A program made the position numbers and the translations under genes. A stretch of 64,000 bases of DNA from Octopus bimaculoides. Taxonomy: Eukaryota. The notes below the pieces were generated by a model that saw nothing but the letters and a program-made list of their open reading frames with translations, was not told the origin of the DNA and did not search any database. The stretch spans positions 64,817,162-64,881,161 of the forward strand of contig NC_068987.1 of assembly GCF_001194135.2 (NCBI RefSeq), read 5' to 3'. This document shows positions 4,061 to 56,649 of the stretch, in pieces (the stretch's first letter is position 1; every line of letters starts with the position of its first letter).

Positions 4061-6185
4061 GCAAAATAACAAAAAATTCAGGAGTTTATCCAGACAGCCC
4101 AGATGTCAACAGAATTATAGCAGAACTTAACCATTCTCTACAGATTCTTGAACCAAAGTTAAAAATCAGTAATTATAGAAGACAGTGCAGTGAAAGGTCT
4201 TTGATCAGATTTTGTTTCTTGAAAACATTAACTTTGCCTTTCGTCCTTTCAGGGTCGATAAAATAAAGTACCAATTGAGAGCTGGGATCGGTGTAATCGA
4301 CTAAACTCTTCCCCACAAAATTTCAGGCCTTGTACCTAAATTAGGACGGATTTTTAATGGCATTGTCTTTGAGGAAGGTATTCACGACACAATATTATTT
4401 GTATCCTGTATAAATCCAAGGGGTTGTCCCTCCTTAAGAAAATCAAAACTGATAAATATCTTTTGCAGAAGCAAAATCTAATATTTTTCTTAGCAGCAAA
4501 GAGAAAGATGGGAAGTTGAGCCAACCAAGGAGTCTCCATTCAGTCACATTGACCCGCTAAGAACAGCAACCAAATCTCCGTTATAATACACCTTACTGTC
4601 TTAGAAAAGAATTCATTGATTAATGAGTTCATAGGTTCACTGGGACTGGGGAAAAGACAGCATGGCCACGGTTGAAACGTCCTTGATCAAAAGTTTGCCC
4701 AACGAGGGCTGACTTGGAGCTAAAAAACAACAGGGGACACTAAGCCAAAGAGGCAGCCTCTGTACAGTCATTCGACCTCCAAGAAATAGTGACAAAATTC
4801 TGCTAAGCCACATCCTTCCGCCTTAAAAAATTAAAGACATTGGGAAAAATTGTTCCAAATGTACAAAAAGAGATGTCATAGCTAGAATAACTTAGATCAT
4901 AGAGCTTGCTTAGCTAGGGATGTTCTGGGGTTAAACCACAATTATGAAACGCTGAAAAATAAAAAGAAAGAGACGCTTTGATGGAATTAGGGGTAGTCGT
5001 CTATTGTGTTCAATAATAACCAAACTGAAGAGAAGGATGCGGTGACATCTATGTTTTTCTTAATTAATAAAGCACTATAAAAGCTGAATGAGGGAAGTTA
5101 TGAAAATATGGATTTATTAAACAGTCATATAAACATGCATTTAAGCAATCACATAAACATTATTAATATTACTATTAAACAATTACGTAGAAGTCTTACT
5201 GTCAGAAATGTGCAGTTAACAAAATGTATATTTACAATATTTATATCTAAATGTATCGATAAAATATTGACTCTAAAGATATGGTTAATAATACTTCAGA
5301 AAATTTATAATCTTAATAATATATGTACTAGTTAAACAATTATATACCGATACTATGAAAAGATGTTCTTAAGGGCAAAATGGTTTTGATGTTTATGTTT
5401 CTTTCTTTCTCAATAACAAACATTAAAAAGTTTTTAAAAAATAAAGAAAAATTACCATTAATTCGCTTCGTTCAGAAAATGCCGCTTTAATTAGAAGTTA
5501 ATGAACGAGTCGAGTTTGCGTAATTAATTATTGGTTCACTGAAATCAGATCCAGAATTCGATATTGTCATAAGTAGATATATATTGGTAGGTAAGAGTTT
5601 GTTGGAATATATAAAATGTTTGTAATGTTGCTATATCAACCACTTCTCGCGACGGCAAGTAGCATATAGCTATATACCCCCAGTTTTCATGTTTATAAAC
5701 CAATGTTTGTTGCTATCAATGCTAAATATTATTGCTCTTAATACATTTCGTACGTCTTACTATTTAAGTCAGCGACGAAACTTTATCAATTCATTGAGCG
5801 TTGAAAAAAATAATTGCTTGATTTTATAAAATTTCTTAACTCAGTCGAAAGTGGCGCTTCCTGAGTCGTTAACAATAAATAAGAAAGGGGAGGTAACTCA
5901 AAGTTTCTCCCTCTGTTTCAATCTTTCTCTCCCTGTCTCTGTCTCTCTTTCTCTCCCTGTTTCTGTCTCTCTTTCTCTCCTTCTCTTCATGTACCATGCC
6001 TACAGGCGTTGGCGATTATAGATCTCGATGCTAAAATATGATGATTCGTGATTTTTCTTGGGAAAGATAAGCAGTGGTTATTCGTTACCGTCGGCAGGTT
6101 TATTTACATTTTACTGTACTAGCCTCCCGCTTTCCCGAGCTTACTCTTGAGACAAACGACCTAATTAACCTTTAGTCAAGGAGAC

Positions 6186-6412
6186 TCATTCGTATTGGTT
6201 TCAAATTTTGGCACAAAGCCAGCAAATTGAGAGGAAGGGGTAAGTCGATCACATCGATCTCAGTGCTCAACTGGTACTTATTTTACCAACCCCGAAAGGA
6301 TGAAAGGTAAAGTTGACCTTGGCGGAATTTGAACTCATAACGTAAAGACGAACGAAATACCGCTAAGCATTTTGCCCGGTGTGTTAACAATTCTGTCAAC
6401 TTGCCGCCTTTG
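6186..6412 (-). mobile_element. SINE family A copy (tRNA-like head, central domain gcctttcatcctttcggggtcgataaaataagtaccag), CpGs well preserved
   Basis: Reverse complement of the ~220-bp unit repeated at 50.4-56.6 kb, with a B-box-like GAGTTCAAATTCC. Confidence 0.85.
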
Positions 6413-6414
6413 GG

Positions 6415-6817
6415 AGACTTGAGCTAAACCTAATCATTAAACGGGCCCTCCCCTCAGTTCTGGAGCCGTCAGGGTTGTTCAGAAGTGATGGAAAGAGACC
6501 AGATGGTCTTACCCTCTGTCCTTGGGNNNNNNNNNNNNNNNNNNNNNNNNNNNNNNNNNNNNNNNNNNNNNNNNNNNNNNNNNNNNNNNNNNNNNNNNNN
6601 NNNNNNNNNNNNNNNNNNNNNNNTTAGAGGTAGGTGCCTCATTTGGGATTCCATAGTCTGCGACTCCTTTGCTCCCTAACACATCCTGGATGCTGCAGTT
6701 AAGGGGAGGGTCACCACTTCTGTAGCCGAATGGAAGAAAACCTTGAAGTATCGGGACCTGACAGTGAACTATCTCTTCCAACCTGTGGCATTTGAGACGT
6801 TCGGAGGGGCTGGGCTA
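6415..6817 (+). mobile_element. CRE-like non-LTR retrotransposon fragment: restriction-like endonuclease (PD..D) domain
   Basis: [35 protein letters not shown] [N gap 6527..6623] LEGRCLIWDSIVCDSFAP*...AEWKKTLKYRDL...FQPVAFETFGG matches the KRPDG-x-PW-x-WD RLE pattern of CRE-clade elements as recalled. Confidence 0.75.
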
Positions 6818-9800
6818 CTAACTGCCAACGGTTAACGTTGTCTTGTCAACGTTGGCAGCTCGCCTCACCGAGGCGTCAGGTGATGCCCGTGAGGGCGCTT
6901 GGCTTTCCCAACGCCTTAGCCTCGCCATCACCCGTAGTAATGCTGCGAGCGGGCTGGCTTGCTTCAGTAGGTTCCGTTAAACCTTGTCGTGTGCGACTAG
7001 TTGCTGTGACGAAAAAAATTGGTAAATTTTTACAATCACCAAAAACCAAAAAATTCCCCACAATACAGTTTTAACAGAAAAATTTGGAAGAATTAGATGA
7101 AAGTTCTCCGGTAATTTTCTTTCATGTAAATAAATGTTTACGTTAATTAAAAACAAAAAAATCATATTGACATCAAAGTATATCGACTTGTGTGATATAA
7201 TGTCTAAAGTCAGACCCCCGCGTCCTGTATGTCTTTACAACCTGATCATCTTCTGCTATTTGATACGTAAGTGCCAGAGAGAGCCTAAGAGTTATGGTGG
7301 CCATACTCACCAAAATGCTTGAACAATGGAGCTGAATCTTCACCAACGGATGCAGTTTAATGTCTTATCCAGGGCATCATAGTTATTAGATGGTCAAAAG
7401 ACACGAAGCAATGAACAAGCTTCTAGGTAGTTTCTCGGTTTACTAGAAATAGTAGTTACTGTCTCTTGAGCCACATCATAATAGTTGAAAGAAATGACAT
7501 CAGAAAATATAGTTTAACAAAATTATGGGATGGTCACGAGTGGAATGTATTTAATTATAGGTCTGCTCAATCAGAAATGACTTGTGGCTAAACAACCACA
7601 GCAAAATGACATATTTCGTTTGTGTGGGAGAATATTCGTTGTTAGAAAACTCATTCTTTATCTTTTATATTTTACTTGTTTCAGACCTTGCTAGGGCATT
7701 ACCTTAAAGAGCATAGACGAATAAATCGACCCCAGTACCTGTTTTTTAAAGTATGGTACTTATTCTAATCGCCTCATTTGCCTAACGGCGTAGTTATGCA
7801 GACGTAAACAAACCAGCGCCGGTTGTGAAGCGGTGGAAGGATCAAACACAAATACATAGACACACGTACAACGCATATATACGACAGGTTTCCACATATT
7901 TTTCGTTTACCAAATTCAATTTCAAGACGTTGATTGGCTCGGGGCTATAGTAGAAGGCACTTGCCCAAAACCACATGGTTGCAAAGTGACTTATAATCAA
8001 TAAAATTACTGGATAACAAGAAATTAATGGTGCAGTTAGAAGACCCAGTTGCTACGTATGTGGTAGTTGTAGTGGATTCGATCCACAATAGCCAAATTTC
8101 ACGTAACAGTTCAACAGAACTTTTCTCATGGTGGAACAATGGTTTTTCTGTGACAGTAGTTTTACATTTACCAGATTGCCTTAGCTAGGCTGAAATAATA
8201 TCTTCACCACTTGATCCTTCTAACCTCAAAAGCTAGAATTAAGATAACAAGTACCACCAACAAACCATTGTTCTCAACGACATGCCTATCCTTCTGGATA
8301 GTTATAAAAGCAAGAACCCCCAAGCAAAAATCAGTTAGTCACTTGCTAACAACTCAGTTAGTGACAACTCGAGTAAGAGAGACCGATGATCAATTAGGGA
8401 AACGGACCACTAGAATCATGGCCACAAGCAGGCAACCGCTAAAGACAAACGGCCAGAAAAAAAAGAAAGTTTATAGTCGGCGACTATGCGAGCCAACGTC
8501 CCACACTCTCTCAGTTTTACTAACTGACTTTCTCTTCTCTGCACATTACCATATCTCTCTCTATGGTTTACTACTACAATAAGAACATACAGGCCGAAAT
8601 TAACTTTTTTACTTCGCATGCTCTAGGATTTTATCACCTGCCCGTCGAGGCAAGGTATATTCAATATAACGGTAAATAAATATTTCCTTAAAACTTCATG
8701 CATTGTTCATCTTTCATCCTTACATAATGAAGAATCTCAACCATCTACAAATATCAACCGTTTCATAGTAAAGGCGACTTGGAATTATTCTTTCCAAAAG
8801 ATGAAGGTAAATGAAAAGAAAAAGGAGAGTGACAGACAGCATTAAAAGCAGTGCTCTACGTTTAATGTGGCCACACGTATGGATGATAAATGAAAAATGG
8901 TTTGATGCGTGGAAGCCATGGTCTTCTCCTGTGCGTTGCCTCCTATCTGCTACTGGTGTGTGATGAGAGAGACTAGATCACTTCTTTACTGTCCGACGTC
9001 TTGGCGAGAAAAGAGAAAGAGATGAGTCTCTGAACCTTAATGTTGCTTATGCCCTCTATTGGCCAGCGTGTTTAAACCTGCTGTCAAGCGAGGTAACTGC
9101 ACCTACATATTCATTAAATAAATAGCATATGGTCTAAGTCATCATTTGGTCGGGTAGATGATGATAGACATCTGTTGATGCCAGTGAATCTGGATAGAAG
9201 AAAAGGTTGTTCTGCCAATTGACTTATTCAGAAGTGATGATATAAGGTGGTACCGGTGCCAGTCAGCCGTCAATGAAATTAAACTGCAAATCGATGGATT
9301 TACTTCCGAATCATAGGCACAAGAATATAACAGCCTGAGATATTCGCTAGAATAATCTCTACAACTGCGTTCCTTTGACAAAATGCTTTTCAGTGAAATC
9401 TTATGGACTTACTAAAATTGCTTGAGCGTCAGACAAAATTTCCCACAATATTTAATTACAGCTCTCTACTGTCTGGGCTCTAATCCCACCGAGGTTAACT
9501 TTGTCTTTCATCCATCTGAGGTCGATAAAACAGTCAAGCGATTGGCTATTCGTAAAATGTATCTTAGAATAATAAAATAGATTAAGAAGATTAAGCAGTG
9601 TTTATTAGCGCTATGTTTAATAACGAGTACAGTTAAAGACAATCGGATATATTTAACGGTCTTTATTGGTGTGGTTGGGCACATTAATCCTCTAAATTGA
9701 CGAGTTTTGTTTACCGTCATTCACTAGCCATAAAAGAAGCTTCAACTTCAGTAATTTTACTGACTTGTTACATATGTAACGCGCAAAAAAATTGTTGTAA

Positions 9801-9854
9801 TGCAAATAAAAGCCTGTCCTGAACTCGCTTGTAAAACGGAATGACCTACTAGTT

Positions 9855-10241
9855 TGTAGTGAACCCTGGCGGTCACATTCTGGAAGCTTCCGGTTAACGT
9901 GGAAGTCGGGGACTTCTGGTTTATCCCTTATATAGAGGAAGGAATTTCTAAATTCGTGCCATTCAGTGCCTGTTGATTCTTCGACATGCATTGGGTCAAG
10001 CCGCCAAATACATACCAGCTCGCGCACACATTCGCCTCACTTACTTGGAGATATGTGATTGCAAACGTGCGCGCAAGCTGGTGTGTATGTGGCGGCTTGA
10101 CCCAATGCATGTCGAAGAATCAACAGGCACTGAATGGCGCGAATTTAGAAATTCCTTCCTTTATATAAGGGATCAACCGGATGTCCCCAACCTCCACGTA
10201 AACCGGAAGCTTCCAAAATGTGACCGCCAGGGTTCACTACA
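9855..10241. mobile_element. 387-bp fully palindromic (foldback) MITE with TGT..ACA termini and AGTT target-site duplication
   Basis: Left arm tgtagtgaaccctggcggtcacatt... is the reverse complement of right arm ...aatgtgaccgccagggttcactaca, pairing almost to the centre (~10048). agtt flanks both sides (9851..9854, 10242..10245). Confidence 0.9.
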
Positions 10242-10318
10242 AGTTTATAACTGAAGGAAAGTTTTGTATTTATCAGTGTTTATCGGGCAGTGATGTGCTT
10301 TTATATGGACATCACAGC

Positions 10319-10349
<31 letters not shown>

Positions 10350-10596
10350 TACAGTATGTGCGCGCGCACGTAGATATATTGTAGTATGGTGTTCTTCAAT
10401 CAGAAATATGGATGTCACAAGGAATACTAGATTTATTATTAATTACAATTTCAGAGCGGCGAGCTGGCAGAACTGTTAGCATGCCGGGTAAAATCAACTT
10501 TGCCTTTCACCCTTTCAGGGTCGTTGAAATCAGTACTAGCTCCTTCAAAACTTCAAGCGTTGTGCTCTATAGTAGATATGATTATTAATTACAATT

Positions 10597-11454
10597 AAAT
10601 TTCTGGATCTTTATGATTTGACGGGCAACACTTGTTTTCTTAACGAAACACTTTCAAACTTGGGATACTGGTAGAATGTGTCATATAAAACAACTTCTTC
10701 TCTTAACCTTCTTAACAAAAAATTGTACATCGCAAGTTATTTCATGTTAAAGTTGTCGTATTTCTGTAATTTCAACCAATCACTGACGTCTATTCAGCTG
10801 AATACAGTTAGTGCTGTTCGGTGTCAAGTGTGTTATTCCCTGTTTAATTATATCATTATTCCCTAGTAAGGGTTTAGGGTTCGGGTTTTAGGGTTAGGGT
10901 TTTAGGGTTATGGTTATGAGTTATAGGGTTAGAGTTAAGGTTATGNNNNNNNNNNNNNNNNNNNNNNNNNNNNNNNNNNNNNNNNNNNNNNNNNNNNNNN
11001 NNNNNNNNNNNNNNNNNNNNNNNNNNNNNNNNNNNNNNNNNNNNNNNNNNNNNNNNNNNNNNNNNNNNNNNNNNNNNNNNNNNNNNNNNNNNNNNNNNNN
11101 NNNNNNNNNNGTCATAAATAACAGTGACAAACGAAATATATACCGCTGATAGTTGTTGTTGACAACGGATAGTTTTTGTTGACAAACAACGGCACTAATT
11201 TTATTCAAGGGAAAAATCCCGTAACACCGTTGTTTACATTCCACGGCGTAATTGTTTTCACCTCAATAGACGTCAGTGATTGGTTGAAATTACCGAAATA
11301 TGACAATTTTTTACATGAAATAACTTCGAATACAATTTTTTTTTATCTGTTCTATAACACAAAATATACAAGTATTCGAAGTTTGAAAGTGTTTCGGTAC
11401 CAAAAACATTACATAAAAAAATGTTTTCCGTCAAATCATAAAGATCCAAATTTC
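10597..11454. mobile_element. Non-autonomous element with ~200-bp inverted arms enclosing telomere-like repeats
   Basis: 10605..10800 (ggatctttatgatttgacgg...aatttcaaccaatcactgacgtctatt) is mirrored at ~11265..11447 (aatagacgtcagtgattggttgaaatt...ccgtcaaatcataaagatcc). N gap at 10946..11110. Confidence 0.8.
10869..10945 (+). repeat. Degenerate interstitial (TTAGGG)n-like repeat
   Basis: agggtttagggttcgggttttagggttagggttttagggtt..., running into the N gap. Confidence 0.8.
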
Positions 11455-11861
11455 TTACAAATCACACATTAAGGAGAGTATACTCGATTTAACCGACTTT
11501 AATACATAATTAATCAATGCTGTATTGTGCAGTGTCCTTCGTACAAACAAGTGAAGTTTTAGACATTCACTGCTTTTCACTGGTTTAAAGGACTAACGAA
11601 AGAGAAATATATCTGCCAGCGATGCACTTACTATATAAACAGAAGCAGAACTCAACTCTAGACTCTCTTTCTCTCTCTCCTTGGCAGACATCAGCTAGAG
11701 ACAGAAGTGGCCGCTGCTTATTCTTTTGTTAGTATAATCCAAGACACATTTTATTAGAATGAGATATGAATTCGCCGTATCTCGATTCCAATCGACAACA
11801 TATATTGATTTCTGATATTCTAGGAACAATTTCCAACTCACATTACACCTGACATTCACAA

Positions 11862-11890
11862 CGCGCGCGCGCGCACACACACACACACAC
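11862..11890. repeat. (CG)6(CA)n alternating purine-pyrimidine tract
   Basis: cgcgcgcgcgcgcacacacacacacacac read directly. Confidence 0.9.
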
Positions 11891-12494
11891 TTATGTAGCA
11901 TATATATTGTTATTTTCGCAACACATTTGGAAGACAAATGTGTTGCAAAAATATACACATCCATATTATACTCAATACAATTTACACATTTGTACTTGAA
12001 TATCGTTACTTCTCTTTGTATTTATCATGCTACATTAGATCTAATGGGCTCTTTTAGATTTAAAAACCCATTAAATTTCACTGAATCCCGCTGAAATTAA
12101 TGAGATCCTTTTAAGTTTTTGGGCCTCTACAAATTATGTGGATCCCCAAGATTGAATGGGGTCCTCTTTATTATGTTATTATGTTTTGAAGTAAGAAGTT
12201 CGTATGGGCCCCACCACCTGTAAATTCGGCCCTGGTTGTAAATAAAAAGAAATTACACACATGCATGCGTTTCCATCCCACGCCACAGTTCCATTCAGAC
12301 ATATTCGGTGAAAGTTCGTTTACTTTCCCACATTTGAAAGACTTTTCAATATGAAACCGTTCGGTAACATGAATTGACTTTTATCAAACTAGATTTACAA
12401 TGTATATATATGTAGCAGAAGTGATTTACACTATCATTGTGTGAGATGTTTTCATTTTGACTCGTCTAGGCTTAAATACCTCAATATCGGCTCC

Positions 12495-13671
12495 ACAAGG
12501 TACGAAAAATATTCCTCCAGTAGTTCTGACCTCGTCTATAGAATTCATATTTTTTCCGTCCAAATGACTTTGAAGACTGGGGAATAAATGGTAATCAGAT
12601 GGGGCAATGTTCGGCGAATATGGTGGGTGGGGCATCGTTTCCCATTCAAACTATTCCAGCCTTTGGAACGTCATCCTCGCAGTATGTGACCGAGCATTAT
12701 CCTGATGAAAGAACACTTTTCGTCTTGAAACCAAAGATGGTCGTTTTTCTTCTCGTGCTAACTTAAGCTGCTCAAGCTGCTCGCAGTAGATCTCCTTTGT
12801 AATCGTTTGGTTTGGGTTTAAAAGTTCAAAGTGGACTAAACCTTTCATATCCTNNNNNNNNNNNNNNNNNNNNNNNNNNNNNNNNNNNNNNNNNNNNNNN
12901 NNNNNNNNNNNNNNNNNNNNNNNNNNNNNNNNNNNNNNNNNNNNNNNNNNNNNNNNNNNNNNNNNNNNNNNNNNNNNNNNNNNNNNNNNNNNNNNNNNNN
13001 NNNNNNNNNNNNNNNNNNNNNNNNNNNNNNNNNNNNNNNNNNNNNNNNNNNNNNNNNNNNNNNNNNNNNNNNNNNNNNNNNNNNNNNNNNNNNNNNNNNN
13101 NNNNNNNNNNNNNNNNNNNNNNNNNNNNNNNNNNNNNNNNNNNNNNNNNNNNNNNNNNNNNNNNNNNNNNNNNNNNNNNNNNNNNNNNNNNNNNNNNNNN
13201 NNNNNNNNNNNNNNNNNNGCCAGTTCCTCAACAGTTACGATGGGATTTTACTCCAGCAGAGTTTGCAGGGCATCCTCGCTGAGCTCTACTGATCTTCTAG
13301 GACCAGGCTCGTCTTCTCGGCTATAGTTTCCAACTCGGATTTTCTGGAACCACCGTTGACACTGGCTTACGCCTATTGTCCGATCACCATATACTGCATT
13401 AATATTCCTCGCATTTTGCGTTGCGTTGTTGCCTTTATTGAACTCATAAAGCAAAATATGCTGAATATGTTCCTTTGTCACTTCCATTATAGCTTTGAAA
13501 AAATAATTGTTAAAATCGAACTGCACTCTTCAAAATTTGCACTAAGAATAAGCACAAGGTAAAATTACTACCTGCTTTTACAGCAAGTTGATGCACGTAG
13601 TTTATTCCGTCCCCCTCCGACTTTTTGTTCAGGTAATTGAAACAATCCGCATTAGTTATAGGATGACCCAA
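12495..13671 (-). mobile_element. Mariner (DD34D) transposon, inactivated, 3' end truncated, N gap 12854..13218
   Basis: TIR-like ttgggtcatcctataactaatgcggatt at 13671..13644. N-terminal HTH MEVTKEHIQHILLYEFNKG...CQRWF. Catalytic region HQDNAR...YSPNIAPSDY has 34 residues between the two D and an in-frame TAG at 12653..12651. Confidence 0.93.
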
Positions 13672-15264
13672 CACACACACACACACACACACGCTGATGT
13701 CACTTGCATTCATATTTTCTACAAGAGTAAAGCAAACTTGTCCCAAGTAGGATGTGAACTCAGAGCATTCAAATACCAACTTAATGTATGTGCTATGGAG
13801 TTGCAGTATGCAGGAGGTACACATGCCTGTGAATTCCTTACGGATCGAAAACACGACGGATTATTTCGATCGGATGGGTACTTAACATTTTCACTCTAGC
13901 TGCAACTCAAATATTACGATGCTATATTTTTGTTTACTACTCTACCGGTTTCAATGAAGTGTATTATTTATAGAACATTGACTTTTATGTTCATATTGAT
14001 ATTTCAAGTCATAGATAGTGAATGTCATCGCAGTTGTTGAGGTGCTCAGTTATTGACACAGTTCTCACTGTGTTTTCGTCTCCTTTTATCGATTGTATTA
14101 TTTTCACAAAGGAGGATGGTTATAATGTCATGGCAACAAGAATCGCTTTGGTATTTAACATGAAAGACAAAAAAAAAAAGTTTCATTATTTTAAAGCACT
14201 TCCTTGTTTCAACAATTAAATGGCGAATTGTTAAAACCTCCTCAAGTAGAGCAAAGAAAAGTACTATTTTTGCTTATGTGAATTAAAGTTAGGGTGCAAA
14301 GGTTTCCGGGATGGTTCTTAAAATGAAAGAATGATTAAACAAACAGACGAACGAATCATAGAATATGTTGCAGTATGCAGTATGTTGCTTTAGAGTTGTC
14401 TCCCTTTATATTAAGCTAATTCTTTCTATTAATTAGAATATATTTATACATTTATTCATATATTCATATTTAAAATGTGTAAGCAAAAAATATATGTTAA
14501 TGGAATATATTGATGTATTTCACCTTTATTAATTAATTTATTTATTGACGATCAATATTTTGTTCAAAATCAGAAATTGACTTAAATAAGATGCAATAAT
14601 AATATATTATTGTATTAAACAAAAACAAAATAACATCTATGACATAAGCGACCTCGGCTTAGCTTTAACCATGTTTAATGTCGGAACGCGTCTCCATACA
14701 AATAAACAACACCGAGACTAACCTAACTGTTTGTATGTTTGTGCAATAACAAATCATGTAAGTAACTATCTTTAATTACTTAGTGTACACACAGTATTTA
14801 TACTTGAACAAAATGAAAGTCACAGGCAGTATATACGTATGTATGTCCGGTTTCTTTTTCGAAGTAAATTGGTCAATCCCCGCTTAATGACAAACTCCGA
14901 CACAAGTGGACATGAAAATAGAAAATAAACACAGAAAAAACCCATAACAAACGAAAGACAAAGAAACTTCGCATCGGACAGAATCACTTCGAGTTATTAT
15001 TGCTTTTTGAATTTTTCTTCTACGATGTATGTTATAATTTTTTTTTAATATCTTCATTTGTTTGGTTTCGTCAGGTGAAATGTCTTGTGTACTTTTAGTT
15101 GGCTTGTAATGTTTTGTTGGGTGTTGTCTTTGTAGCCGATAAATAACTCACTGTTGTGATTATTTTTATTATTTAATTGATCCGGATAGCAACACAAACA
15201 CCAAATTCAATGTTAAAGAAAACGTAGTAATTGGACGTATATTATACAAACATATGTACGCATA

Positions 15265-15636
<372 letters not shown>

Positions 15637-16719
15637 TCTAATCTCTGATTCGCTTTCTGAAAAATAAAAGTTTTGGCGCAAGTCGCTCATTGTAATCATG
15701 GATAACGTTATCAAAATTAGGGGTTTCCGAATTCTTTAATTGCTTAATGTTATCAACCGGGTTTTACTCTCGAAAAGGCCTTAAACATGATTAAAAGAAA
15801 CTGTTTCCGTTGTACATACAATATAAACACACATTGTCATTTAAGGCATATCAGCCGCAACTATCCTGTCTTTTTTTTTTTTTGTCAAGACAGTCGGATG
15901 TGTGGGATTTCATAATTTTACTGTTATTCCAAGTAGTTCAACCTACTGCGTATGGGCTGTTTTTATTGTTGCTAAGCCGTAGGCTAATTCTGATCGAGAA
16001 AACCTATAATAAAAAGCGTCCCAATCATGACCATCCTGTCCTTTTGTATATCAGGTACTACATTGTTGTTGAAAGTGTCCTTTGTCTAAGATTGTAGCGT
16101 ATGTGATATGAAGAGATTTTGGCTGCTATTTCTTGCAATTCGAGCGACTGCGCAAACGCTCCATTGCTGACTCGGATTTATTTTAGTTATTGTTTATATT
16201 CGCAGATCATTTCTGATTGAGCGGTCTTACGATCAAAGGTATTCTAAGCATCATCACATCTATTTCTCAGCCAGTGAGCAGTTCACACCATCTAATGTAT
16301 CCTTCACGCACACCCGCATCATCATTATCATCATCGTCAGCGTTGTTTTAACGTCCACTTTTCCATGTTTGAATAGGTCAGACAAATTTCGTTGAGGTAG
16401 ACTCACTATGACTGGATGCCCTTCCTGTTGCCAACTCTCACTCGTTTCCAAGCAAGATAGTGTTTCGCCATGACCAAACATGTTTACATGGAAGGTTGGA
16501 AATGATCAATACTACTTGCACGATAGTGACATGACACTCATTTACAATTATTGCATGAAATCAAGACACACACACACACACACACACATAAGCTTCTTTC
16601 AGTCTCCATCTACCAAATCCACATATAAAGCTTTGGTTAACCTAGGCTATAGTGGTAGTCACTTCTCTAAGGTGTACCTGAAACCACATGGTTGGGAAAC
16701 AAACTTCTTAACCACATAG

Positions 16720-30224: not shown

Positions 30225-30257
<33 letters not shown>

Positions 30258-30390
30258 TTTTGTGTTAGAGATTCAAGATGAAGATGGTTTTTTTGTCTGA
30301 TTGTTGAATCAAATATTTGACTGTATGGTGTATTTGATTATTAAAAATATATAACTTTATTTATTCATTTTTCTTTTGTAGAAACTCATT

Positions 30391-31126
30391 ATGGCAAGTG
30401 GAGAATCTAGCCAGTCTTCCCGAGTACCCCCACCGAGACCTACCCCGCCAGCTAAAATACTATATAAGAGGTTTCAGAAGCTCTTTAAAACATCACTGCA
30501 ACTTGCCAATGAAGGAATTGTATTTGATGAGATTGGAAAAGCTAATGATGCTATTAATATGTACACAATGTGCCTTGAGCACATCAAGTTCAGTCTCGAT
30601 GTTGATCTTGACGATCAATACCTGTCAACAGATGAACAAACATCTTACCGAGACATGCTTCACAAATTGACCAAGACAAAGATGCAAGTCGAATCACGCC
30701 TTGATATGCTGAACGTTGTGAATAATACCGCAACCGACAGTAATTCAAATGTAATGAGTCCACCTTCCTATGAAGAGGTCATGTCCGGATCTTTTGTTGG
30801 TGCTCAAGATGGAGCAACTGCTTCTAGAAACACTCACTGTGCCAACCGCCGTGTCTCACAGAATGCCACGCGGATATTTTTCATACCAGAAGGTGTACAG
30901 CTGCTCTATATAACTCCGGAAGGTTATGTCACAGCTCCTTCCTATCCCACTGCCCTCAACATATATCGCATAGATGAAGAAGACACCAGTGAAACTGCCA
31001 ATACCACACCTCCCGCTTTCTTACAGGTTGGAGAATGGCTCTATCCACTCTTACCTGGAATTTCCCCAGTCTTACATGCTTCATATGGAGCGTATATATT
31101 CCCTGACATGCTTGCACCAAGAGAGG
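30391..31126 (+). CDS. SPART: Spartin coding exon 1 (MIT domain, PPSY motif, start of central domain)
   Basis: Acceptor ttttcttttgtag ends at 30381, ATG at 30391, 245 codons open, donor G|gtgagt at 31127. PPSY is at 30760..30771. Confidence 0.95.
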
Positions 31127-33923
31127 GTGAGTATCAGTAGTTATTTTTATTTTAATTCATTTTTCTTTTTACTCTCTTTTTGCTCAGCAAACTTATTCCT
31201 ACCACCATTCTTTGATATCTTGTTCATTTCTGACGTCATTAGTATTACTGTTACTATTGTCCAACGTATGCTAGCATGGAACATGGACATTAAATAATGA
31301 TAATGGTGGTTGTCACAAATAGTATTCATTCATCATCATTTTAATATCCACTTTTCCATGGATCAGATGAAACTTGTTGCGGCAGTTTTTCTACAGCTGG
31401 ATGCTCTTAAATGTCTATTTCTCCCTAATCCTTTAAACAATAAACAGCTTAGTGACCAAACATGTTTTCACAGCAAATTGCAAATGAAGACACTACAATG
31501 CACACGCACGCACGAAGGACTTCCTGCAGTTTCCACCTGTCAATTCCACTTACAAAGCATTGATCAGCGCAAAGTCATAGTAGAAGACACCTGTCCACAG
31601 TATCATGCAGTAGGAAAAAGTCAAAATGATGCTGTAAAGCAAGCCTTTAGCCACACACAGCCATGTTAGTGTCCTCAATATTAACATTAATCACATCACT
31701 ATTATCCATTTTTAAACCTTTCAGTTTCTAATTTCCTGTCAAAGTATCATTTCTGTTGTTGTAGTAGTTCTGTTAATAATAATAGTCTCTGCTCTCTCTA
31801 CAACACTCTGACTATTCTACTAACCAAGACCGAAAACATTACAAAGAGCATCAGCCTACCTACATCATCATCATCATCATCATCATTTAATGTCTGTTTT
31901 CTATGCTGGCATGGGTTGGACAGCATAACAGGAACTGGCAAGGCCAGGGGCTACACTAGGTTCCATGGTCTGTTTTGGCTTGGCATCTATGGCTGGATGT
32001 CCTTCCTAATGCCAGCCACTCCACAGTGTGTACTGGGTGCTTTTTAAGTGACACCATCACTAGTGCTTTTTATGTGGCACCAGCACCAGTGCTTTTTACA
32101 TGGCACCAGTGCTTTTTACATGGCACCAGCACCGACACCAATGCTTTTTATGTGGCACTTTGGTTTTAGGATCTCAGTTCTGTTGTGGTGGGCAATACAG
32201 ATTCCACATTATTATCATCCTTCTCCATTATCTTTATCAACTTCTCTAGCACTATGAACTTTTCTTCATCCTTTATTTTCACTGACATGACCACCACTCA
32301 CCATGTCCTCACATCCTCATCATTATCATTTGTTACCATCTCTATCACATACAACTCCACATTCTTCATTCTCTTTATCATTACCTCTACCATCATCACC
32401 ATCATTGCTTGCCATACCCTTGTATTGTTACTGCCACCAATACCACCATCATCAACATAACCTCTGTATATCTACATTCGCATGGATCAGCCATAGAATC
32501 CATGCCAGAAGAGAAAATGGAGCCAGGTGCAGCCCCTGGCCTTACCAGCTCCAGTGAAATCATCCAACCCATGCCAGCATGGAAAACAGACATTAAATGA
32601 TGATGATGATTTTCCATGCTTGCATGGGTCAGACAGAATTCATTGAAGCATATTTTCTAAAGCTGGATGCCCTTCCTGTTGTGAGCACTCACTCATTTCA
32701 AAGTTAGGCTAAGATAGTAATTCCCCATGGCCTGAAATTGTTTTTTATGGGAAACCATTTGCGCGTGATCGTCACCAATGTTGCCTTCCTGGCACTTGTG
32801 CCAGTGGCACATGAAAAGACATTCGAGCGAGATCGTTGCCAGTGCCGCTGGACTGGCTCCTGTGCAGGTGGCATGTAAAATACACCATTTTGAGCATGGC
32901 CGTTGCCAGTACCACCTGACTGGCCTCCATGCCAGTGGCACGGTAAAAGCACCCACTACACTCTCAGAGTGGTTGGCGTTAGGAAGGGCATCCAGCTGTA
33001 GAAACTCTGCCAAATCAGATTGGAGCCTGGTGTAGCCACCTGGTCCACCGGTCCTCAGTCAAATCGTCCAACCCATGCTAGCATGGAAAGCGGACGTTAA
33101 ACACCGATGATGATAATGGTGTCCTAATATTTTTCTGTTATGTTAAGTGATGAGATGAGCTGTTTTTCCATATTTATATTTCTTGATTAAGTTATTATTA
33201 GCAGAGTAAACATTGGCCATTGACCTTATAATCTGTTTTCAGATCTACCTCCAATGTTTTGGTTGTTACATGGGAAAATAAGATGTGTGTGTGTGTGGCT
33301 GCATTTTATGTATGTGTAAGATTGAATATGTGTCAATGTATTGTGTAAAAGTGCCTGTGTGTATACTATGTGTGTGTGTGTGTATGCATGATGGAGTGAA
33401 TATGGTGTGGATGTGTGTATTGTATGTGTTTTTATGTGTGAGAGAGTGTATATGTGTATGATTGCATATATTGTGTGTATGTATGTGAGAGAATGAATAT
33501 TTTATGTATAGGTGTGTGTGTGTGTGTGTGTGTGTGCATACCTTTATATATCATCATCATTTTACCTCTACCTTTCCATGCCTGGATCAGACAAGAGTAT
33601 GTCAGGAGGTGCAGAAGTTTCTGTGGCCAGATACTCTTCCTGTCACCAACTCCCACTTGTTTCCAAGTGGGGTAATAATGTCCCAGTCTGTCAAACAACA
33701 AACGACCTTTGCATATTTATATAGAGAACTGGAAACAAATGACAAGAGGTGATTAAACTTTTAGTTTCACAAAGATTGCACAACATGCCAAGACATGTCA
33801 AGAAGATATGCTTTTGTGGTGGATGCAAGCAAATGAAACTACTGTTAGCAAAGCCATTGTTTAAAATCAGTGTGTGAATATACTTATGGATGAGGGAAAT
33901 AGGAACTCACATGCACACACACA

Positions 33924-33954
<31 letters not shown>

Positions 33955-36900
33955 GCGCATGACTAATTTCTTTCAGTTTCTGTCTAACATATCTATTCAC
34001 ATCTAGTAAGCGAAGGGGCCAGTATATAAAGGAAAAGAAGAAAACAAGAACTACACGCACAACAACAGAAATTGTAAAAAACTTACTCTCTTCCCTTTTT
34101 TTTCTCCCTCTTGTCCATGTATCCATTAAAACTCAATATGACTGAACTTTCAATAATGTACATTTGTTATATCCTTCGCCAAACATTTACTTTGATATTA
34201 ACTATCCCTGTGAAACTCATTGAATTCTGTGAACATTTGATCATTTGATTGCTTAAACATGTCTGTCTGATTCCTATTTAATAATTTTAAATCCTGTTAA
34301 AATCCTCTTGTTTTAAATATATTTATACCATTGATAGACAAAAAATTGTTGAAACTAGTTTGGTATGTATGTGAATAAATCTGTTTACAACAACTACATG
34401 TTTTTCAAATTCAGGTGTATTTTCAAACCCCAAAACAAATTCTCCTATATTTTTTCTTGTGTGAGAATACACCTCCCCCCCACGTATATATATACTGGAA
34501 CTGAAACTGAAACAACACTGTTGGAAGGCAGGTTTAGAGAAGGCACAAGCCAAAACTACGTGTCCTTCTGCTCCATCGGTCATTTGAAGCTCAGACAGTG
34601 TCACGTGACCGTTAGCTGGTGCTGGCTGCTGGAGCCTACTGGCAAGTATTTACAGGAAAATTTGGCATGATGGTCATTTGCCCGCTGACATTCGTTGACG
34701 CTGCATTGAAGAAACAAAAGAAAAAGGAAGCAGAAGAAATGCACTCAACACCAGAGCTGAAGACACCTCTGAAAGGGGAGCTCCGCCATGTCAAAAACAG
34801 TAGAGGAGTAGGGGCTGAAACCAGATATGGTTCCTCCTGATGATGTCTTTCGCCATTGGATCCTATAAAGGAGCTGTTGTATGAAACGTGGTTGGAATCC
34901 TTACCCTCATATATATATATGCTATGCTATGCTTCTGTGAGTGTGTATTGAGCATATTCATGTTTTTCAAGAAAATAAACAGCATCTAACCATATTGTTT
35001 ATAATATATATATATATGTGCATATAAAGTTGCAAGCTGGCAGAATTGCTACTGCACCAAGCAAAATGCTTAGAGGCATTTTGTTTGTCTTTATGTTCTG
35101 AGTTCAAAATCTACCAGGGTTGACTGTGATTTTCATCCTTATGGGATCAATAAAATAAGTACCAGTTGAGTACTGGGGTCAATGTAATTGATTTACTCCC
35201 TCCCCTGAACTTGCTGGCCTTGTGCCAAAATTTGAAATTAATTTATATATGCATATGTGTGTGTGTGTGTGTGTGTGTTATGCCAGATGTTACTTCTGTA
35301 ACATGGTTTCAACTTAATATCCATGAATTTAGATTTGGTGATCTTCAGTGGACTTTTTTGGTTGCTGGTGATGCAGAAGACAAGATTATGGCATGTCATG
35401 TGGTACATTACATCACCACTGCTCTGTGTTGCCTTGGAATAAGATTATCGCAGTATTATCACAGAATATATTTGGCTTTGTACTCTGCTTTTGACCTCCT
35501 TCTCTGTTTTTTTTAGGCTGTTCAGTTGGTCTTATATTACCAAAATCATTGTCTCCGGAGGAAAAAAAGGAATTTGAAGACTTACTTTCAAACCTCACAC
35601 ACCTTGAACGACAGCCCCGTGCTGAAAGACCTCGAGTTTTGGACCTTGGGGAAAAGAGTATTAGTCAGGAAGAGGAAGAAAAGACCAGTACAAAAGTCGC
35701 CAAGGGTATAGAAAAAGGTTTGGGATGTTTGTTTATTTTTTGTCTTTTCCCTTCTTTTCACTGCAGTATTCTTACCATATATGTTATATCTGTTACGCAA
35801 TTATTAGAAACTTTGTTTGTAACTTACTCTTAACCTCTCACTGTGATTACTGGTAGAACCTCATTAAAGTTTGACTAAATGGTTCATGTGAGCTGTCTGA
35901 ACTGTATATAGTAAATGGCTAAATGTAGGCTTAGGGATTGTCAGTGTTATTAGTGAAGGTCCATTAGGATTTTATCCCCAGTTCTTGTTTCATTATCTTA
36001 ATTCTCATGAGACATAATAAGGCTGTGCTGGTAGAAGTATTTGTGAAAGCTGCTGTATGCTGATACCATAGCTCTTGGTGTTGAAATTGATCAAGGAATT
36101 TATAAAGAATCTTTGAAATTAATGACAATAGATTTTTACTGAAGGGCTTGAAAGTAAAATATAGCTCTCATTAAAGTGGTAACTAATAGTTGGAATCACT
36201 GAAGCTGTAACAGTATCTGGGATATGGATTCCTTTGATATGCATGAAAGGTATATCATCATGAACAATACTGTTGTCATTAGAATGAATTAATGCATTAA
36301 GTATACACTGACAGCACATCTTGGACTTCTTTACATATAGCTCCAATAATTGTTGTTGTTGTAGTTGTTGCTGTACTAGTTGCTTCTGCAACTCCTGTTG
36401 CTGTTCTTGTTGCTTTTGTAACTGTATTATAGAAGCTAATAGGTCTTCCATCATTTAACAAGTTGTATCACAAACAAACTGTTAAATAAGCTACGTGAGC
36501 TTTGAAACCCTAATCGCCAGATATTGTGTCCTCCATCTACAAATGTCGTGGTACTGCCATGATATTGTGACGGATGGTTTAGATACACTGTACCAGTGTA
36601 GCAACAGTAAACAAGATAACGATGCAGCTGTAATAACAACATAATGATCCAACAATCTCGTCACAAACCAACAATCAGTATTTCAAACAAACTAACCAAC
36701 CGACACCTTCCGACTTCACTGCAAACTCAACTTGAGCTAATACAAATTTTACTCCGACTGCTATTATTTATATTGCTTGGTCCAGTCTATTTCTCACTAG
36801 TGGGTGTCGTGACTCTCATCACAACAGTTATCATCAACAGTGTTTTCTTTACTGTATTATTCTTTCAGTTGCTGAACTCATTGCCTGGGGTCTTGGTAAA

Positions 36901-38874
36901 GGAGCAGAACATGGTACAGCACTTCTTAAGAAAGGGTCTGAACAAATTATTTCTCACATAAGTCCAGCTCAGCGCAAAGCTGTTGATCCAACTGCTCAAA
37001 AAAGTGCTGAGTATTTAAGATATGCAACACATTCTGCTGTGAGAGTTAGTGGCTATGCCTGTAAGTAATTGTTTTTTTTTTTGGTCTTTCCTCCTCTTTC
37101 AACTTTTTCATTCTACTCTTGTTTACCTTATATTTCATACTTCACATTTTACCATAACAAGGTAAGTTGTTATGTTTACTGTGTAAGTTAAACAGAACTG
37201 TTATACTGAAGTGTGGGATCATATTTTTTGGGAGAGGCCACTCTAGATATGACATACTTTTGCCTGTTCTGTTGTGAATAACGAAAACATCTGGTATTCT
37301 GGTTGCTCTTGTTTAAGTGGAAATCATTCTAAACTTAGTAATCCTGTATTTATTGTTGCTATATAAGTAGTTTGGTCTCCAATTTAACCAACAAAGTTGC
37401 TTAATGAGGGAGATTTTGCTGTTGTCTTCAACTGGTCAAACAACATTATAGACAGCAAGTTAATGAAGGAGCCTCTGTGTAGTTGTTTGACCTATTAGAA
37501 ATAGCAGCTAAATCTCTACAAAATTACATTTAGCTGACTTCAAAATAAAGATATACTAAAAAATGGGTTGTAGTCGGCATTATTTTTTTATTTTGTTAGT
37601 TCTATTAGGGTTGATCTGGGCATTGAACAGAAGCAATTTGATAGAAGCTCCCTTATTGGTTTATGAAAAACAATGATCTTTGTTTCAAACATAGACAGAA
37701 GTTTTTAACATTTCCCAAAATCCCTTAATCTTGTCACAATATAAGGGTTGCCAATTTAGCATATTTTATGCTAGATCTAGCATTTTTTTTCAGCATTTAT
37801 CAGAAAATTTTTGAATCTAGCATTTAGCAGGGAAAATAGCAGGTTTAAAATTTTATTTAGCATATTTTTAGCATTTTTCTTGGATCATGACATTTCCACA
37901 ATAGTTTCCCTTTTTTTCTTCTTTTTCCTCCTTTTCCACTTTCGTTAATGTATCTTATAGTCAAATTTTAGTACTATCGGCTATTATTGAATTTTTCTTT
38001 CACTTTCTTGAAACTTCAAATAAAAGTTTATCAAAAGGAAGTTTATCAAGTTATGAACTTATATTTTTATTAATCATTCGATTTATTTTCTTGCTTCCCA
38101 CTACATTATAATGAGCAAAGATAAAACAAAGTTGTACTGGCAAAAATTCTGAAAGGAATGACTTGTGATGCCAGCGTTTACTAAGTGGTTGTGTGAAGTA
38201 CCTAGTGACCAATCTAAAACACATTGCAGATATTGTAGATGTAATATGTTGGCAAAATATTCTCTTTCAGTAAGCCACTTTGAAGCAAAGAAACATAAGG
38301 CATCAACTCCACAGCAAATGATTCCTCATACCAATCTTATTAAAACCAAAAATGATAAGACATCTATGCTTGAAGCAGATTTAGTTTATTTGTTGCCACT
38401 CATCATTTAATAGCTGTGATCACTTAATAAAGTTATGTAAGAATTATATGTCTGATAATGATATTATATCCAAAGTGATGTTGCATTGTGCAAAATGTGC
38501 AAATATTGTGAGAAATGTTCTAGCTCCATATTTTGATATAGAGATTTAATTTCTGATACAGGAGATAGAAAATTTAGCCTGTTATTAGATGAATTCAATG
38601 ATATATCAAATTCCAGTTTAATATCTTCTATCTTTTACTTGCTTCAGTCATTAGGCAGTGGCCATGCTGGGGCACAACCTTGAAAATTTTTTAGTTGAAT
38701 CTATCAACCCCTGTACTTATTTTTTTAAAGCCTGGTACTTATTCTAGCAGTCTCTTTTGCTGAACTGCTAAGTTATAAGAATGTAAACATACTAGCACCA
38801 GTTGTCAAGTGATGGCGATGGTGGAGACAAGCACACACACATGTGCGAGCGTGCACACACACATGTGCGAGCGT

Positions 38875-56300: not shown

Positions 56301-56649
56301 ATCGACTAGCCCTTCCAGCAAAATTTCAGGCCTTGTGCCTATAATAGAAAGTATTATTATTATTATTGTAATCAACGTAACCCCTCCCCAGAAATTGCTG
56401 TCCTTGTGTCAAAATTTGAAACCATTATTATTATTATTATTATTATTACAGTCACTAACATTCTTTAGGAAGGTATGAATGTCTCTTACTCACATCCATG
56501 TTCTTCCTCAAAAAATTTTAGGCTGTGTGCCTATGTCAGAAACAAGTGATTATTGATCCACTTTTTGCCCACAATAAATATGCAATGTGAACAATATAAA
56601 CAGAGCCAGGTCACTTTGTTACTGATTGGCCTATGTATTAATTCTCTGT

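What the first reader, a model, noticed from the sequence alone, without database searches (positions are those of the whole stretch)
9855..10241. Palindromic MITE carrying mirror-image, outward-facing CCAAT + TATA + ETS-like cassettes
The whole 387 bp folds on itself. Each arm keeps CCAAT (10102..10106 on +; ATTGG 9990..9994), TATATAA about 60 bp further out (10162..10168 on +; 9934..9928 on -) and CCGGAAG/CCGGATG motifs near the ends. That is the layout of a portable bidirectional promoter, lying inside the CpG-rich block. If transcribed through, it gives a ~190-bp hairpin, a potential ADAR or endo-siRNA substrate in a lineage known for extensive A-to-I editing. TGT..ACA ends with a 4-bp TSD are reminiscent of Ginger2/TDD-type transposons (inference).
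Basis: partly seen in the sequence, partly recalled or inferred. Interest (0 to 1): 0.7.

Follow-up and report, generated by a model that had tools for sequence, protein, structure and literature searches.

The report
Decaying fold-back transposon copy, promoter unproven
The 387-bp palindrome is real and looks like one old, non-coding copy of a cut-and-paste transposon, but nothing shows that its CCAAT/TATA/ETS-like motifs act as a promoter, so it is most likely ordinary.

Summary
Observation confirmed. Positions 9855-10241 form a near-complete palindrome: two 181-182 nt arms, 92% complementary, 15 mismatches, no indels, 25-nt spacer. As RNA it folds at -321 kcal/mol (z = -36). Every motif is at the stated coordinates. 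The ends are TGTAG...CTACA, flanked by AGTT on both sides. It lies in a CpG-undepleted block (5.25-16.5 kb; CpG o/e 0.87 against 0.22 outside; same G+C).

Best reading: a single, non-coding, fold-back (MITE-like) DNA transposon insertion with integrase-type ends (TGTNR, 4-bp TSD), as in Ginger2/TDD. It has been decaying since insertion; 7 of the 15 arm differences are CpG transitions.

The promoter reading is not supported:
- The mirror symmetry follows automatically from the palindrome.
- Motif positions differ between arms as often as the rest (2/26 against 13/155).
- One ETS-like site is lost in the left arm.
- A CCAAT-to-TATA layout occurs in 2-6% of 181-nt stretches of this window.
- The arms read inward give an equally good TATA + Inr-like layout.

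Copy number, an autonomous partner and an empty orthologous site could not be tested. There is no second copy in the window, and no accessible collection holds related DNA. Low interest.

The parts
9851..9854 (.). Left copy of the putative 4-bp target-site duplication, AGTT
   Evidence: The same 4 nt lie at 10242-10245. The chance of such identity at a fixed boundary in this window is 0.64%.
9855..10035 (+). Left arm (terminal inverted repeat), starting TGTAGTGAACCCTGGCGGTCACATT
   Evidence: inverted repeat I1; alignment: 15 mismatches, no indels. The first 25 nt are identical in both arms.
10036..10060 (.). 25-nt spacer, the loop of the hairpin; it is itself partly self-complementary
10061..10241 (+). 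Right arm (terminal inverted repeat), ending ...GACCGCCAGGGTTCACTACA
10242..10245 (.). Right copy of the putative target-site duplication, AGTT (AGTTT if read as 5 nt)
10102..10106 (+). CCAAT in the right arm; its mirror ATTGG is at 9990-9994
   Evidence: Both lie in the 49-nt stretch (9958-10006) that has no arm-to-arm mismatch; a clean run that long is not significant (p = 0.11).
10162..10168 (+). TATATAA in the right arm; its mirror is at 9928-9934 on the minus strand. On the opposite strand the same bases read TATATAAA (right arm) and TATATAG (left arm) pointing inward.
   Evidence: The adjacent position 9935/10161 differs between the arms.
10203..10209 (+). Distal ETS-like CCGGAAG; its mirror CTTCCGG is at 9887-9893. 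It is part of a small internal palindrome, GGAAGCTTCC.
   Evidence: CCGGA[AT]G occurs only 5 times on both strands of the whole window, and 3 of those are in this element.
10177..10183 (+). Proximal ETS-like CCGGATG. The left-arm counterpart at 9913-9919 is CTTCTGG (read as CCAGAAG), with 2 of 7 positions different.
9959..9968 (+). Inr-like CCATTCAGTG, 32-36 nt inward of the left-arm TATA; its mirror is at 10128-10137 on the minus strand
   Evidence: Read directly. Functional meaning is inference only.
5251..16500 (.). CpG-undepleted domain that contains the element (context, not part of the element)
   Evidence: CpG o/e 0.87 inside against 0.22 outside. The value is unchanged when the element is removed (0.87).

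Best explanation
This is one copy of a short, non-coding, fold-back type DNA transposon (MITE-like). It consists of two terminal inverted repeats of about 181 nt joined almost head to head. A DDE transposase of the retroviral-integrase type supplied in trans (Ginger2/TDD-like) would recognise the TGTNR ends, cut the element out and paste it into a staggered 4-bp cut at ...CTAGTT|TATAAC..., duplicating AGTT. These mechanistic steps are inferred.

Since insertion, or since the arms were last identical, the two arms have diverged by about 8.8%, mostly through transitions, and half of the differences are at CpG. That is the pattern of unconstrained decay.

The promoter-like motifs are either chance or remnants of the parental transposon's own TIR-embedded promoter. 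In the second case they would point inward, not outward. At this locus the element most likely does nothing. If a longer transcript ever crosses it, the RNA would form a hairpin of about 180 bp, as with any palindromic MITE.
For: - Palindrome, its size and its 25-nt spacer.
- Ends and duplication: TGTAG...CTACA ends with AGTT on both sides. Chance is 0.64% for the duplication and 1.1% for a TGTNR start at a fixed boundary.
- Published hallmarks: TGTNR termini, 4-bp TSD and 50-180 bp TIRs for metazoan Ginger2, including a mollusc element with 180-bp TIRs and a 252-bp non-autonomous family (PMC2836005). TSD is 4 bp for Ginger1, 4-5 bp for Ginger2 and 3-6 bp for LTR elements (PMC10045372).
- No coding capacity: the open frames have no Pfam match and no homologue.
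- Decay pattern: 11 transitions and 4 transversions, 7 of 15 at CpG, no indels, and motif positions no better kept than the rest. Mismatch clustering is not significant (p = 0.11 and 0.05).
- Other mobile-element debris lies in the same block: SINE-like repeats at 10.45-10.8 kb and a mariner HTH relic at 13251-13529.
Against: - Only one copy is seen. No second copy or relic exists in 64 kb, and no related sequence was found elsewhere, so multi-copy status, the core of the definition of a MITE, is unproven.
- These negatives are weak. None of the DNA collections holds this organism's genome, and short de Bruijn contigs break at palindromes and repeats.
- The target TAGTTT does not fit the RTATAY preference reported for Ginger2.
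- At 49% G+C the element is not A+T-rich as MITEs usually are.
- No autonomous partner was found.
- An almost loop-less palindrome could also arise by inverted duplication.
Confidence: 0.6

Rival explanations
1. The element is a portable bidirectional promoter: each arm carries CCAAT (-90), TATA (-30) and ETS-like sites that drive outward transcription from about 10195 (+) and about 9900 (-).
For: - The motifs exist with canonical 60-nt CCAAT-to-TATA spacing.
- CCGGA[AT]G is rare in the window (5 sites), and 3 of them are in the element.
- The element sits in a CpG-undepleted, presumably unmethylated domain.
- CCAAT lies in the best-conserved 49-nt stretch of the arms.
Against: - The symmetry is automatic in a palindrome.
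- Motif positions are mismatched at 2/26 against 13/155 elsewhere.
- The proximal ETS-like site is lost in the left arm.
- The layout occurs by chance in 2-6% of local 181-nt stretches.
- The inward reading gives an equal or better TATA + Inr-like layout.
- No recognisable exon or Pfam-matching frame lies within several kb on either side.
- The nearest gene start codon is 20 kb away, at 30391.
- There are no transcription data.
Confidence: 0.08
2. The element works as a hairpin-RNA locus. When transcribed through, it gives a duplex of about 180 bp that feeds Dicer (endo-siRNA or miRNA-like products) or ADAR (hyper-editing), as palindromic Made1 MITEs gave rise to the human mir-548 genes.
For: - The hairpin is extremely stable (-321 kcal/mol, z = -36).
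- The hairpin tip gives weak matches to hairpin-type miRNA models: mir-3149 at 43 bits, mir-1277 at 34.5 bits.
- There is precedent for palindromic MITEs becoming miRNA genes (PMC1784062).
Against: - All Rfam matches are far below the gathering scores of 81-100 bits, and nothing passes at gathering threshold.
- Both strands score alike, as expected for any palindrome.
- There is no evidence that the region is transcribed.
- The stem has accumulated 15 mismatches with no sign of compensatory maintenance.
Confidence: 0.1
3. It is not a transposon. It is a local inverted duplication (fold-back priming or template switching during replication or repair) of a unique segment of about 190 bp, and AGTT/AGTT and TGT/ACA are coincidences.
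For: - It is single-copy in the window, and no relative was found anywhere.
- The palindrome runs almost to its centre, with a partly self-complementary 25-nt spacer.
- Its G+C and CpG content are not far from the surrounding block.
Against: - The joint chance of a 4-nt flank identity (0.64%) and a TGTNR terminus (1.1%) exactly at the ends of the inverted repeat is of the order of 1e-4 to 1e-3, even allowing for a few alternative boundaries.
- Fold-back duplications are not expected to create flanking direct repeats (established knowledge, not tested here).
Confidence: 0.12
4. It is debris of an LTR retrotransposon. Two short LTR pieces with TG...CA ends lie in inverted orientation, and each carries a U3-type CCAAT/TATA promoter.
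For: - TGTNR ends and 4-6 bp duplications are shared with Gypsy-type LTR elements (PMC2836005; PMC10045372).
- LTRs carry CCAAT/TATA promoters that fire towards the CA end, which would match the outward reading (established knowledge).
Against: - Retrotransposition yields direct LTRs, not inverted ones.
- The inner ends of the arms show no TG boundary, PBS or PPT.
- No RT, RNase H or integrase frame lies nearby.
- Only 45 nt would be left for R-U5.
Confidence: 0.05
5. It is an assembly artefact: a false palindrome created by a chimeric join in a gapped draft scaffold.
For: The window is a draft scaffold with nine N runs totalling 1797 nt.
Against: - The arms differ at 15 sites, with a biological substitution spectrum of transitions and CpG decay.
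- There is no gap within 700 nt of the element.
- The flanks are unique sequence.
Confidence: 0.03

Closest known systems
Ginger2/TDD DNA transposons and their short non-autonomous derivatives (for example Ginger2-1N1_NV, 252 bp; Ginger2-1_LS of a sea snail, with 180-bp TIRs)
   Same: TGTNR...YNACA termini (here TGTAG), a 4-bp target-site duplication, long TIRs (published range 50-180 bp, here 181-182), small non-coding derivatives, and occurrence in molluscs (PMC2836005).
   Different: The target TAGTTT does not fit the reported RTATAY preference. No partner with an integrase-like transposase has been found. There is no sequence similarity test against any Ginger2 TIR, because no library was available. 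Here the TIRs make up nearly the whole element.
Made1 / hsa-mir-548 type palindromic MITEs (Tc1/mariner-derived)
   Same: The element is almost nothing but two TIRs and folds into a near-perfect hairpin. That family shows how such elements can become small-RNA genes when transcribed (PMC1784062).
   Different: Made1 is 80 bp with a TA duplication. This element is 387 bp with AGTT and TGT..ACA ends. No small-RNA evidence exists here, and the Rfam matches are far below threshold.
Solo LTRs of Gypsy-type retrotransposons
   Same: TGTNR ends, 4-6 bp duplication, and an internal CCAAT/TATA-type promoter layout (plus established knowledge).
   Different: An LTR is not a full-length palindrome. No direct-repeat partner, PBS, PPT or RT lies nearby.
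Ginger1 DNA transposons
   Same: TGTNR ends, 4-bp duplication and TIRs of 40-270 bp.
   Different: Ginger1 duplications are CCGG or CCGT in 99% of cases. Here the duplication is AGTT.

Membership tests
MITE (generic definition) | Small size (under about 800 bp), terminal inverted repeats and a flanking target-site duplication | tested here: met
   387 bp, 181-182 nt arms at 92% identity, and AGTT on both sides.
MITE (generic definition) | No transposase or other coding capacity | tested here: met
   The open frames across the element have no Pfam match and no real homologue. The three hits of the HMMER representative search are tandem-repeat translations.
MITE (generic definition) | High copy number with size and sequence homogeneity | not testable with these tools
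   There is no second copy or relic in the 64-kb window. The source genome is in no reachable collection. Metagenome, viral and prokaryote scans gave only one chance 20-mer hit.
MITE (generic definition) | A+T richness | tested here: not met
   The element is 49% G+C against 36% for the window.
Ginger2/TDD | Termini follow TGTNR...YNACA | tested here: met
   TGTAG...CTACA. Definition from PMC2836005.
Ginger2/TDD | 4-bp (metazoan) or 5-bp (TDD-4/5) target-site duplication | tested here: met
   AGTT/AGTT, which can also be read as AGTTT. This is a single copy only.
Ginger2/TDD | TIRs of roughly 50-180 bp | tested here: met
   181-182 nt, at the upper limit of the range (range).
Ginger2/TDD | Preference for the A+T-rich target RTATAY | tested here: not met
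   The reconstructed target is T-AGTT-T. This is a preference, not an absolute rule, and only one site is available.
Ginger2/TDD | An autonomous relative sharing the termini and encoding an H2C2 + DDE integrase-like transposase | not testable with these tools
   Of the frames in the 5-16.5 kb block that were scanned, only a mariner HTH relic matched Pfam, and the frames checked elsewhere gave no integrase.
Ginger1 | CCGG or CCGT target-site duplication | tested here: not met
   The duplication is AGTT; the rule comes.
RNA polymerase II core promoter (bidirectional) | TATA and CCAAT boxes at canonical spacing on each outward strand | tested here: met
   CCAAT 10102 to TATATAA 10162, and the mirror 9994 to 9934. 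The same layout occurs in 2-6% of local 181-nt stretches, and the inward reading is equally good.
RNA polymerase II core promoter (bidirectional) | Motifs conserved above background | tested here: not met
   Arm against arm only: 2/26 motif positions differ against 13/155 others. A proper test needs many copies.
RNA polymerase II core promoter (bidirectional) | Mapped divergent transcription start sites | not testable with these tools
   No expression data are available.
miRNA precursor families (Rfam) | Score at or above the family gathering threshold | tested here: not met
   No hit at gathering threshold. The best sub-threshold hit is 43 bits against a threshold of 100.
Tc1/mariner-derived palindromic MITE (Made1-like) | TA target-site duplication | tested here: not met
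   The flanks are ...AGTT and AGTT...; no TA/TA is compatible with the end of the inverted repeat.

The most novel reading that the evidence does not exclude
The element belongs to a mobile family whose TIRs each carry a complete outward-firing CCAAT/TATA/ETS promoter. Every insertion would then seed a divergent transcription unit and, when read through, a 180-bp dsRNA substrate for ADAR or Dicer. That would be a transposon-borne way of spreading bidirectional promoters and editing or siRNA substrates through this genome.
Probability: 0.05. Interest if true: 0.65.

Novelty: new member of a known kind. Interest (0 to 1): 0.2.

Why it matters
If it is what it looks like, it adds one more non-autonomous element to the catalogue of integrase-type (Ginger-like) DNA transposons in molluscs. 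It also gives a clean single-site example of TGTNR ends with a 4-bp duplication. That is useful for repeat annotation but not surprising. It would matter more only if genome-wide copies showed selective retention of the CCAAT/TATA/ETS columns, or if transcription starts mapped to the arms. In that case it would be a documented instance of a MITE distributing ready-made promoters or hairpin-RNA sources.

Tried and rejected
**Searches for further copies**
- Element frame +1 peptide (97 aa) against 5.8 billion predicted proteins: no candidate.
- The same peptide by full HMMER against 1.84 billion representatives: three hits, all tandem-repeat translations.
- A concatenated query against the same protein collection: no hit at E <= 1. 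It held all open frames of the joined empty-site flanks plus all element frames. It was meant to recover short contigs of the related species seen, which is 93% identical in DNA.
- Terminal 20-mer in JGI metagenome contigs: one hit in a G+C-rich bacterial contig, matching over 20-22 nt only, so chance.
- Two element strings in IMG/VR viral contigs: 0 hits. This gives no support for a viral-ITR origin such as a densovirus or Polinton.
- One element string in GTDB genomes: 0 hits.
- Six element strings in the full text of the paper library: 0 hits.
- The run accession SRR11869391 in papers, to name the related organism: 0 hits.

**Searches within the window**
- blastn with word size 7, an nhmmer profile of the two arms, and the terminal 22-mer with 3 mismatches: no second copy or relic.
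- Larger inverted or direct repeats around the element that would indicate nesting in another transposon: none.

**Families considered and rejected from the flank sequence**
- hAT (8 bp), Tc1/mariner (TA), PIF/Harbinger (TWA), piggyBac/Kolobok (TTAA), Mutator (9-10 bp) and Polinton (6 bp, AG..CT).
- CACTA: the CACTA/TAGTG motifs are present but in the wrong orientation.
- Ginger1: needs a CCGG duplication.

**Other checks**
- tRNA- or SINE-like origin: no tRNA.
- A recent octopus repeat annotation lists MITEs but no Ginger elements and no palindromic or fold-back family (PMC13282606).

Full report
**1. What is there**

Positions 9855-10241 are a near-complete palindrome. The repeat finder reports arms 9854-10035 and 10061-10242, 182 nt, 92% complementary, 25 nt apart. 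A global alignment of the left arm with the reverse complement of the right arm gives 15 mismatches and no indel. Eleven are transitions and four are transversions.

Folded as RNA, the 387 nt form a single long hairpin of -321.3 kcal/mol. Dinucleotide shuffles average -110.5, which gives z = -36.5.

The last has no intact mirror. The left arm reads CTTCTGG at 9913-9919, and two of its seven positions differ.

The boundaries read ...atgacctact AGTT | TGTAGTGAACCC ... GGGTTCACTACA | AGTT tataactgaag.... The first T of the element could also be counted with the flank, so the direct repeat is 4 nt (AGTT) or, ambiguously, 5 nt (AGTTT).

**2. Is it more than chance?**

- The palindrome is far beyond chance.
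- A 4-nt identity of the two flanks at this spacing occurs at 0.64% of positions in the window. A TGTNR start has a frequency of 1.1%. Both falling exactly at the ends of the inverted repeat is unlikely by chance, of the order of 1e-4 to 1e-3 after allowing for a few alternative boundaries.
- The promoter-like layout is not beyond chance. CCAAT followed 40-80 nt later by a TATA-like heptamer is found in 2.2% of 181-nt stretches of this A+T-rich window, and a looser version in 6.1%.
- The one motif that is rare is CCGGA[AT]G. It has five occurrences on both strands of the window, and three of them are in the element. The element is also the most G+C- and CpG-rich 400 nt of its neighbourhood.

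**3. Context**

- The window is a gapped draft scaffold with nine N runs totalling 1797 nt. It belongs to an animal genome rich in microsatellites and SINE-like repeats.
- A spartin-like gene lies on the + strand. Its first coding exon is at 30391-31140, and Senescence-domain exons lie at about 36.86-37.07 kb and about 44.1-44.25 kb.
- The closest database relatives of that exon are unnamed contigs. One Logan contig from run SRR11869391 is colinear with the window at 93% DNA identity. No tool named the organism.
- The element lies 20.1 kb upstream of that start codon, inside a domain at about 5.25-16.5 kb where CpG is not depleted. CpG o/e is 0.87 inside and 0.22 outside, G+C is the same, and there is a sharp edge at 16.5 kb. 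The value does not change when the element is removed. This is the signature of a germline-unmethylated domain in a mosaic-methylated invertebrate genome (inference). It is not a vertebrate-style CpG island.
- The block also holds SINE-like sequence at 10.45-10.8 kb, a telomere-like (TTAGGG-type) array at 10865-10945 next to a gap, and a mariner HTH_48 relic at 13251-13529 on the minus strand (E = 3.7e-19).
- No frame with a Pfam match that could be a promoter's target lies within several kb of the element.

**4. What it most likely is**

A 387-bp non-coding sequence made almost wholly of two long inverted repeats, ending in TGTAG...CTACA and flanked by a 4-bp direct repeat, has the anatomy of a non-autonomous cut-and-paste transposon.

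The end signature TGTNR with a 4-bp duplication (5 bp in TDD-4/5) and 50-180 bp TIRs is what Bao et al. describe for Ginger2/TDD. Their set includes a sea-snail element with 180-bp TIRs and a 252-bp non-autonomous family (PMC2836005). A later review gives 4 bp for Ginger1, 4-5 bp for Ginger2, 6 bp for Polinton and 3-6 bp for LTR elements (PMC10045372).

- Ginger1 is excluded by its CCGG/CCGT target.
- The Ginger2 target preference RTATAY is not matched by T-AGTT-T. That is one site tested against a preference.
- The open frames across the element have no Pfam match and no homologues.

The inferred mechanism is as follows. An integrase-like DDE transposase made elsewhere binds the TIRs, excises the element and inserts it at a 4-bp staggered cut. 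None of these steps is shown here.

**5. Age and decay**

- Arm-to-arm distance is JC 0.088 and K2P 0.089.
- Seven of the 15 differences are CpG to TpG or CpA changes, split about evenly between the arms. Both arms have therefore been losing CpG.
- If the arms were identical at birth, each is about 0.044 from the ancestor. With the calibration quoted for Octopus vulgaris (JC 0.09 is about 25 My; PMC13282606), that is roughly 12 My. This figure is inference and depends on the unverified organism.
- Mismatches are somewhat sparser in the middle of the arms: the longest clean run is 49 nt, and there is one mismatch in 71 nt. This is not significant (p = 0.11 and 0.05).

**6. The promoter claim**

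- The 'mirror-image cassettes' are not two observations. With 92% identical arms, any motif in one arm is expected in the other.
- Orientation is undetermined. TATATA is self-complementary. Read inward, the arms give TATATAG (9929-9935) or TATATAAA (10167-10160 on the minus strand), followed 32-36 nt later by CCATTCAGTG (9959-9968), an initiator-like sequence.
- An inward promoter is what one would expect if the TIRs derive from an autonomous element that drives its transposase from its terminal region (established knowledge of DNA transposons; inference here).

The sequence therefore does not favour 'outward-facing' over 'inward-facing' or 'none'. Transcription starts, editing and small RNAs cannot be assessed without expression data.

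**7. The hairpin-RNA idea**

The stem is real. At relaxed thresholds the hairpin tip matches a few miRNA-hairpin models on both strands at 26-43 bits, where the thresholds are 81-100. Nothing passes at gathering scores. Palindromic MITEs can become miRNA genes, as Made1 gave rise to mir-548 (PMC1784062). That is a precedent, not evidence for this locus.

**8. What could not be settled**

The decisive tests all need the source genome and its relatives. They are copy number, duplication length across copies, per-column conservation, an autonomous partner and an orthologous empty site. No available collection contains those genomes as searchable DNA.

All indirect routes failed. These negatives are weak for two reasons: the protein collections hold only called ORFs, and short de Bruijn contigs break at palindromes and repeats. 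Within the window there is no second copy or relic and no sign of nesting in a larger element.

**9. Verdict**

A transposon-like palindromic insertion with integrase-type ends is the best reading (confidence about 0.6, with Ginger2-like membership still a lead). A portable bidirectional promoter is unsupported (about 0.08).

The alternatives are a local inverted duplication (0.12), a hairpin-RNA source (0.10), LTR debris (0.05) and an assembly artefact (0.03).

This is a new member of a known kind, of low interest unless genome-wide copies or transcription data show otherwise.

Noticed in passing
window 5251-16500: An 11-kb domain where CpG is not depleted (o/e 0.87) sits in a window that is otherwise strongly depleted (0.22). 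G+C is the same and there is a sharp edge at 16.5 kb. It may mark an unmethylated intergenic or promoter domain upstream of the spartin-like gene.
   Followed up: partly
window 30391-31140 (+), about 36860-37070 (+), about 44100-44250 (+): Exons of a spartin-like gene. The N-terminal exon of 249 aa has 34-97% identical relatives, one of which carries Pfam MIT (PF04212). Two further exons match the Senescence domain. A related species' genomic contig (Logan SRR11869391) is 93% identical over 30237-31278.
   Followed up: partly
window 13251-13529 (-): A relic of a mariner-type transposase N-terminus (Pfam HTH_48, E = 3.7e-19) next to the N gap at 12854-13218.
   Followed up: partly
window 10865-10945: A degenerate telomere-like array (units such as TTAGGG and AGGGTTTTAGGGTT) abuts the N run at 10946-11110, 620 nt to the right of the palindrome.
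   Followed up: no
window 10440-10810, 9456-9530, 54222-55219, 55872-56366: SINE-like repeats containing GCGAGCTGGCAGAA..GTTAGCA. At 54.2-55.2 kb they form a 235-nt-period array of 4.2 units.
   Followed up: no
window 15267-15640: A long (TATC)n microsatellite of 93 units with a 32-nt higher-order period, inside the CpG-undepleted block.
   Followed up: no
window 10355-10372: A short CG-rich palindrome, TATGTGCGCGCGCACGTA, lies directly after a (TATG)7.8 microsatellite, 110 nt to the right of the element.
   Followed up: no
L003 2397-2418: A 22-nt exact match of the element's terminus in a G+C-rich bacterial metagenome contig (Ga0209131_1035441). It is a chance match with no similarity beyond it.
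   Followed up: yes
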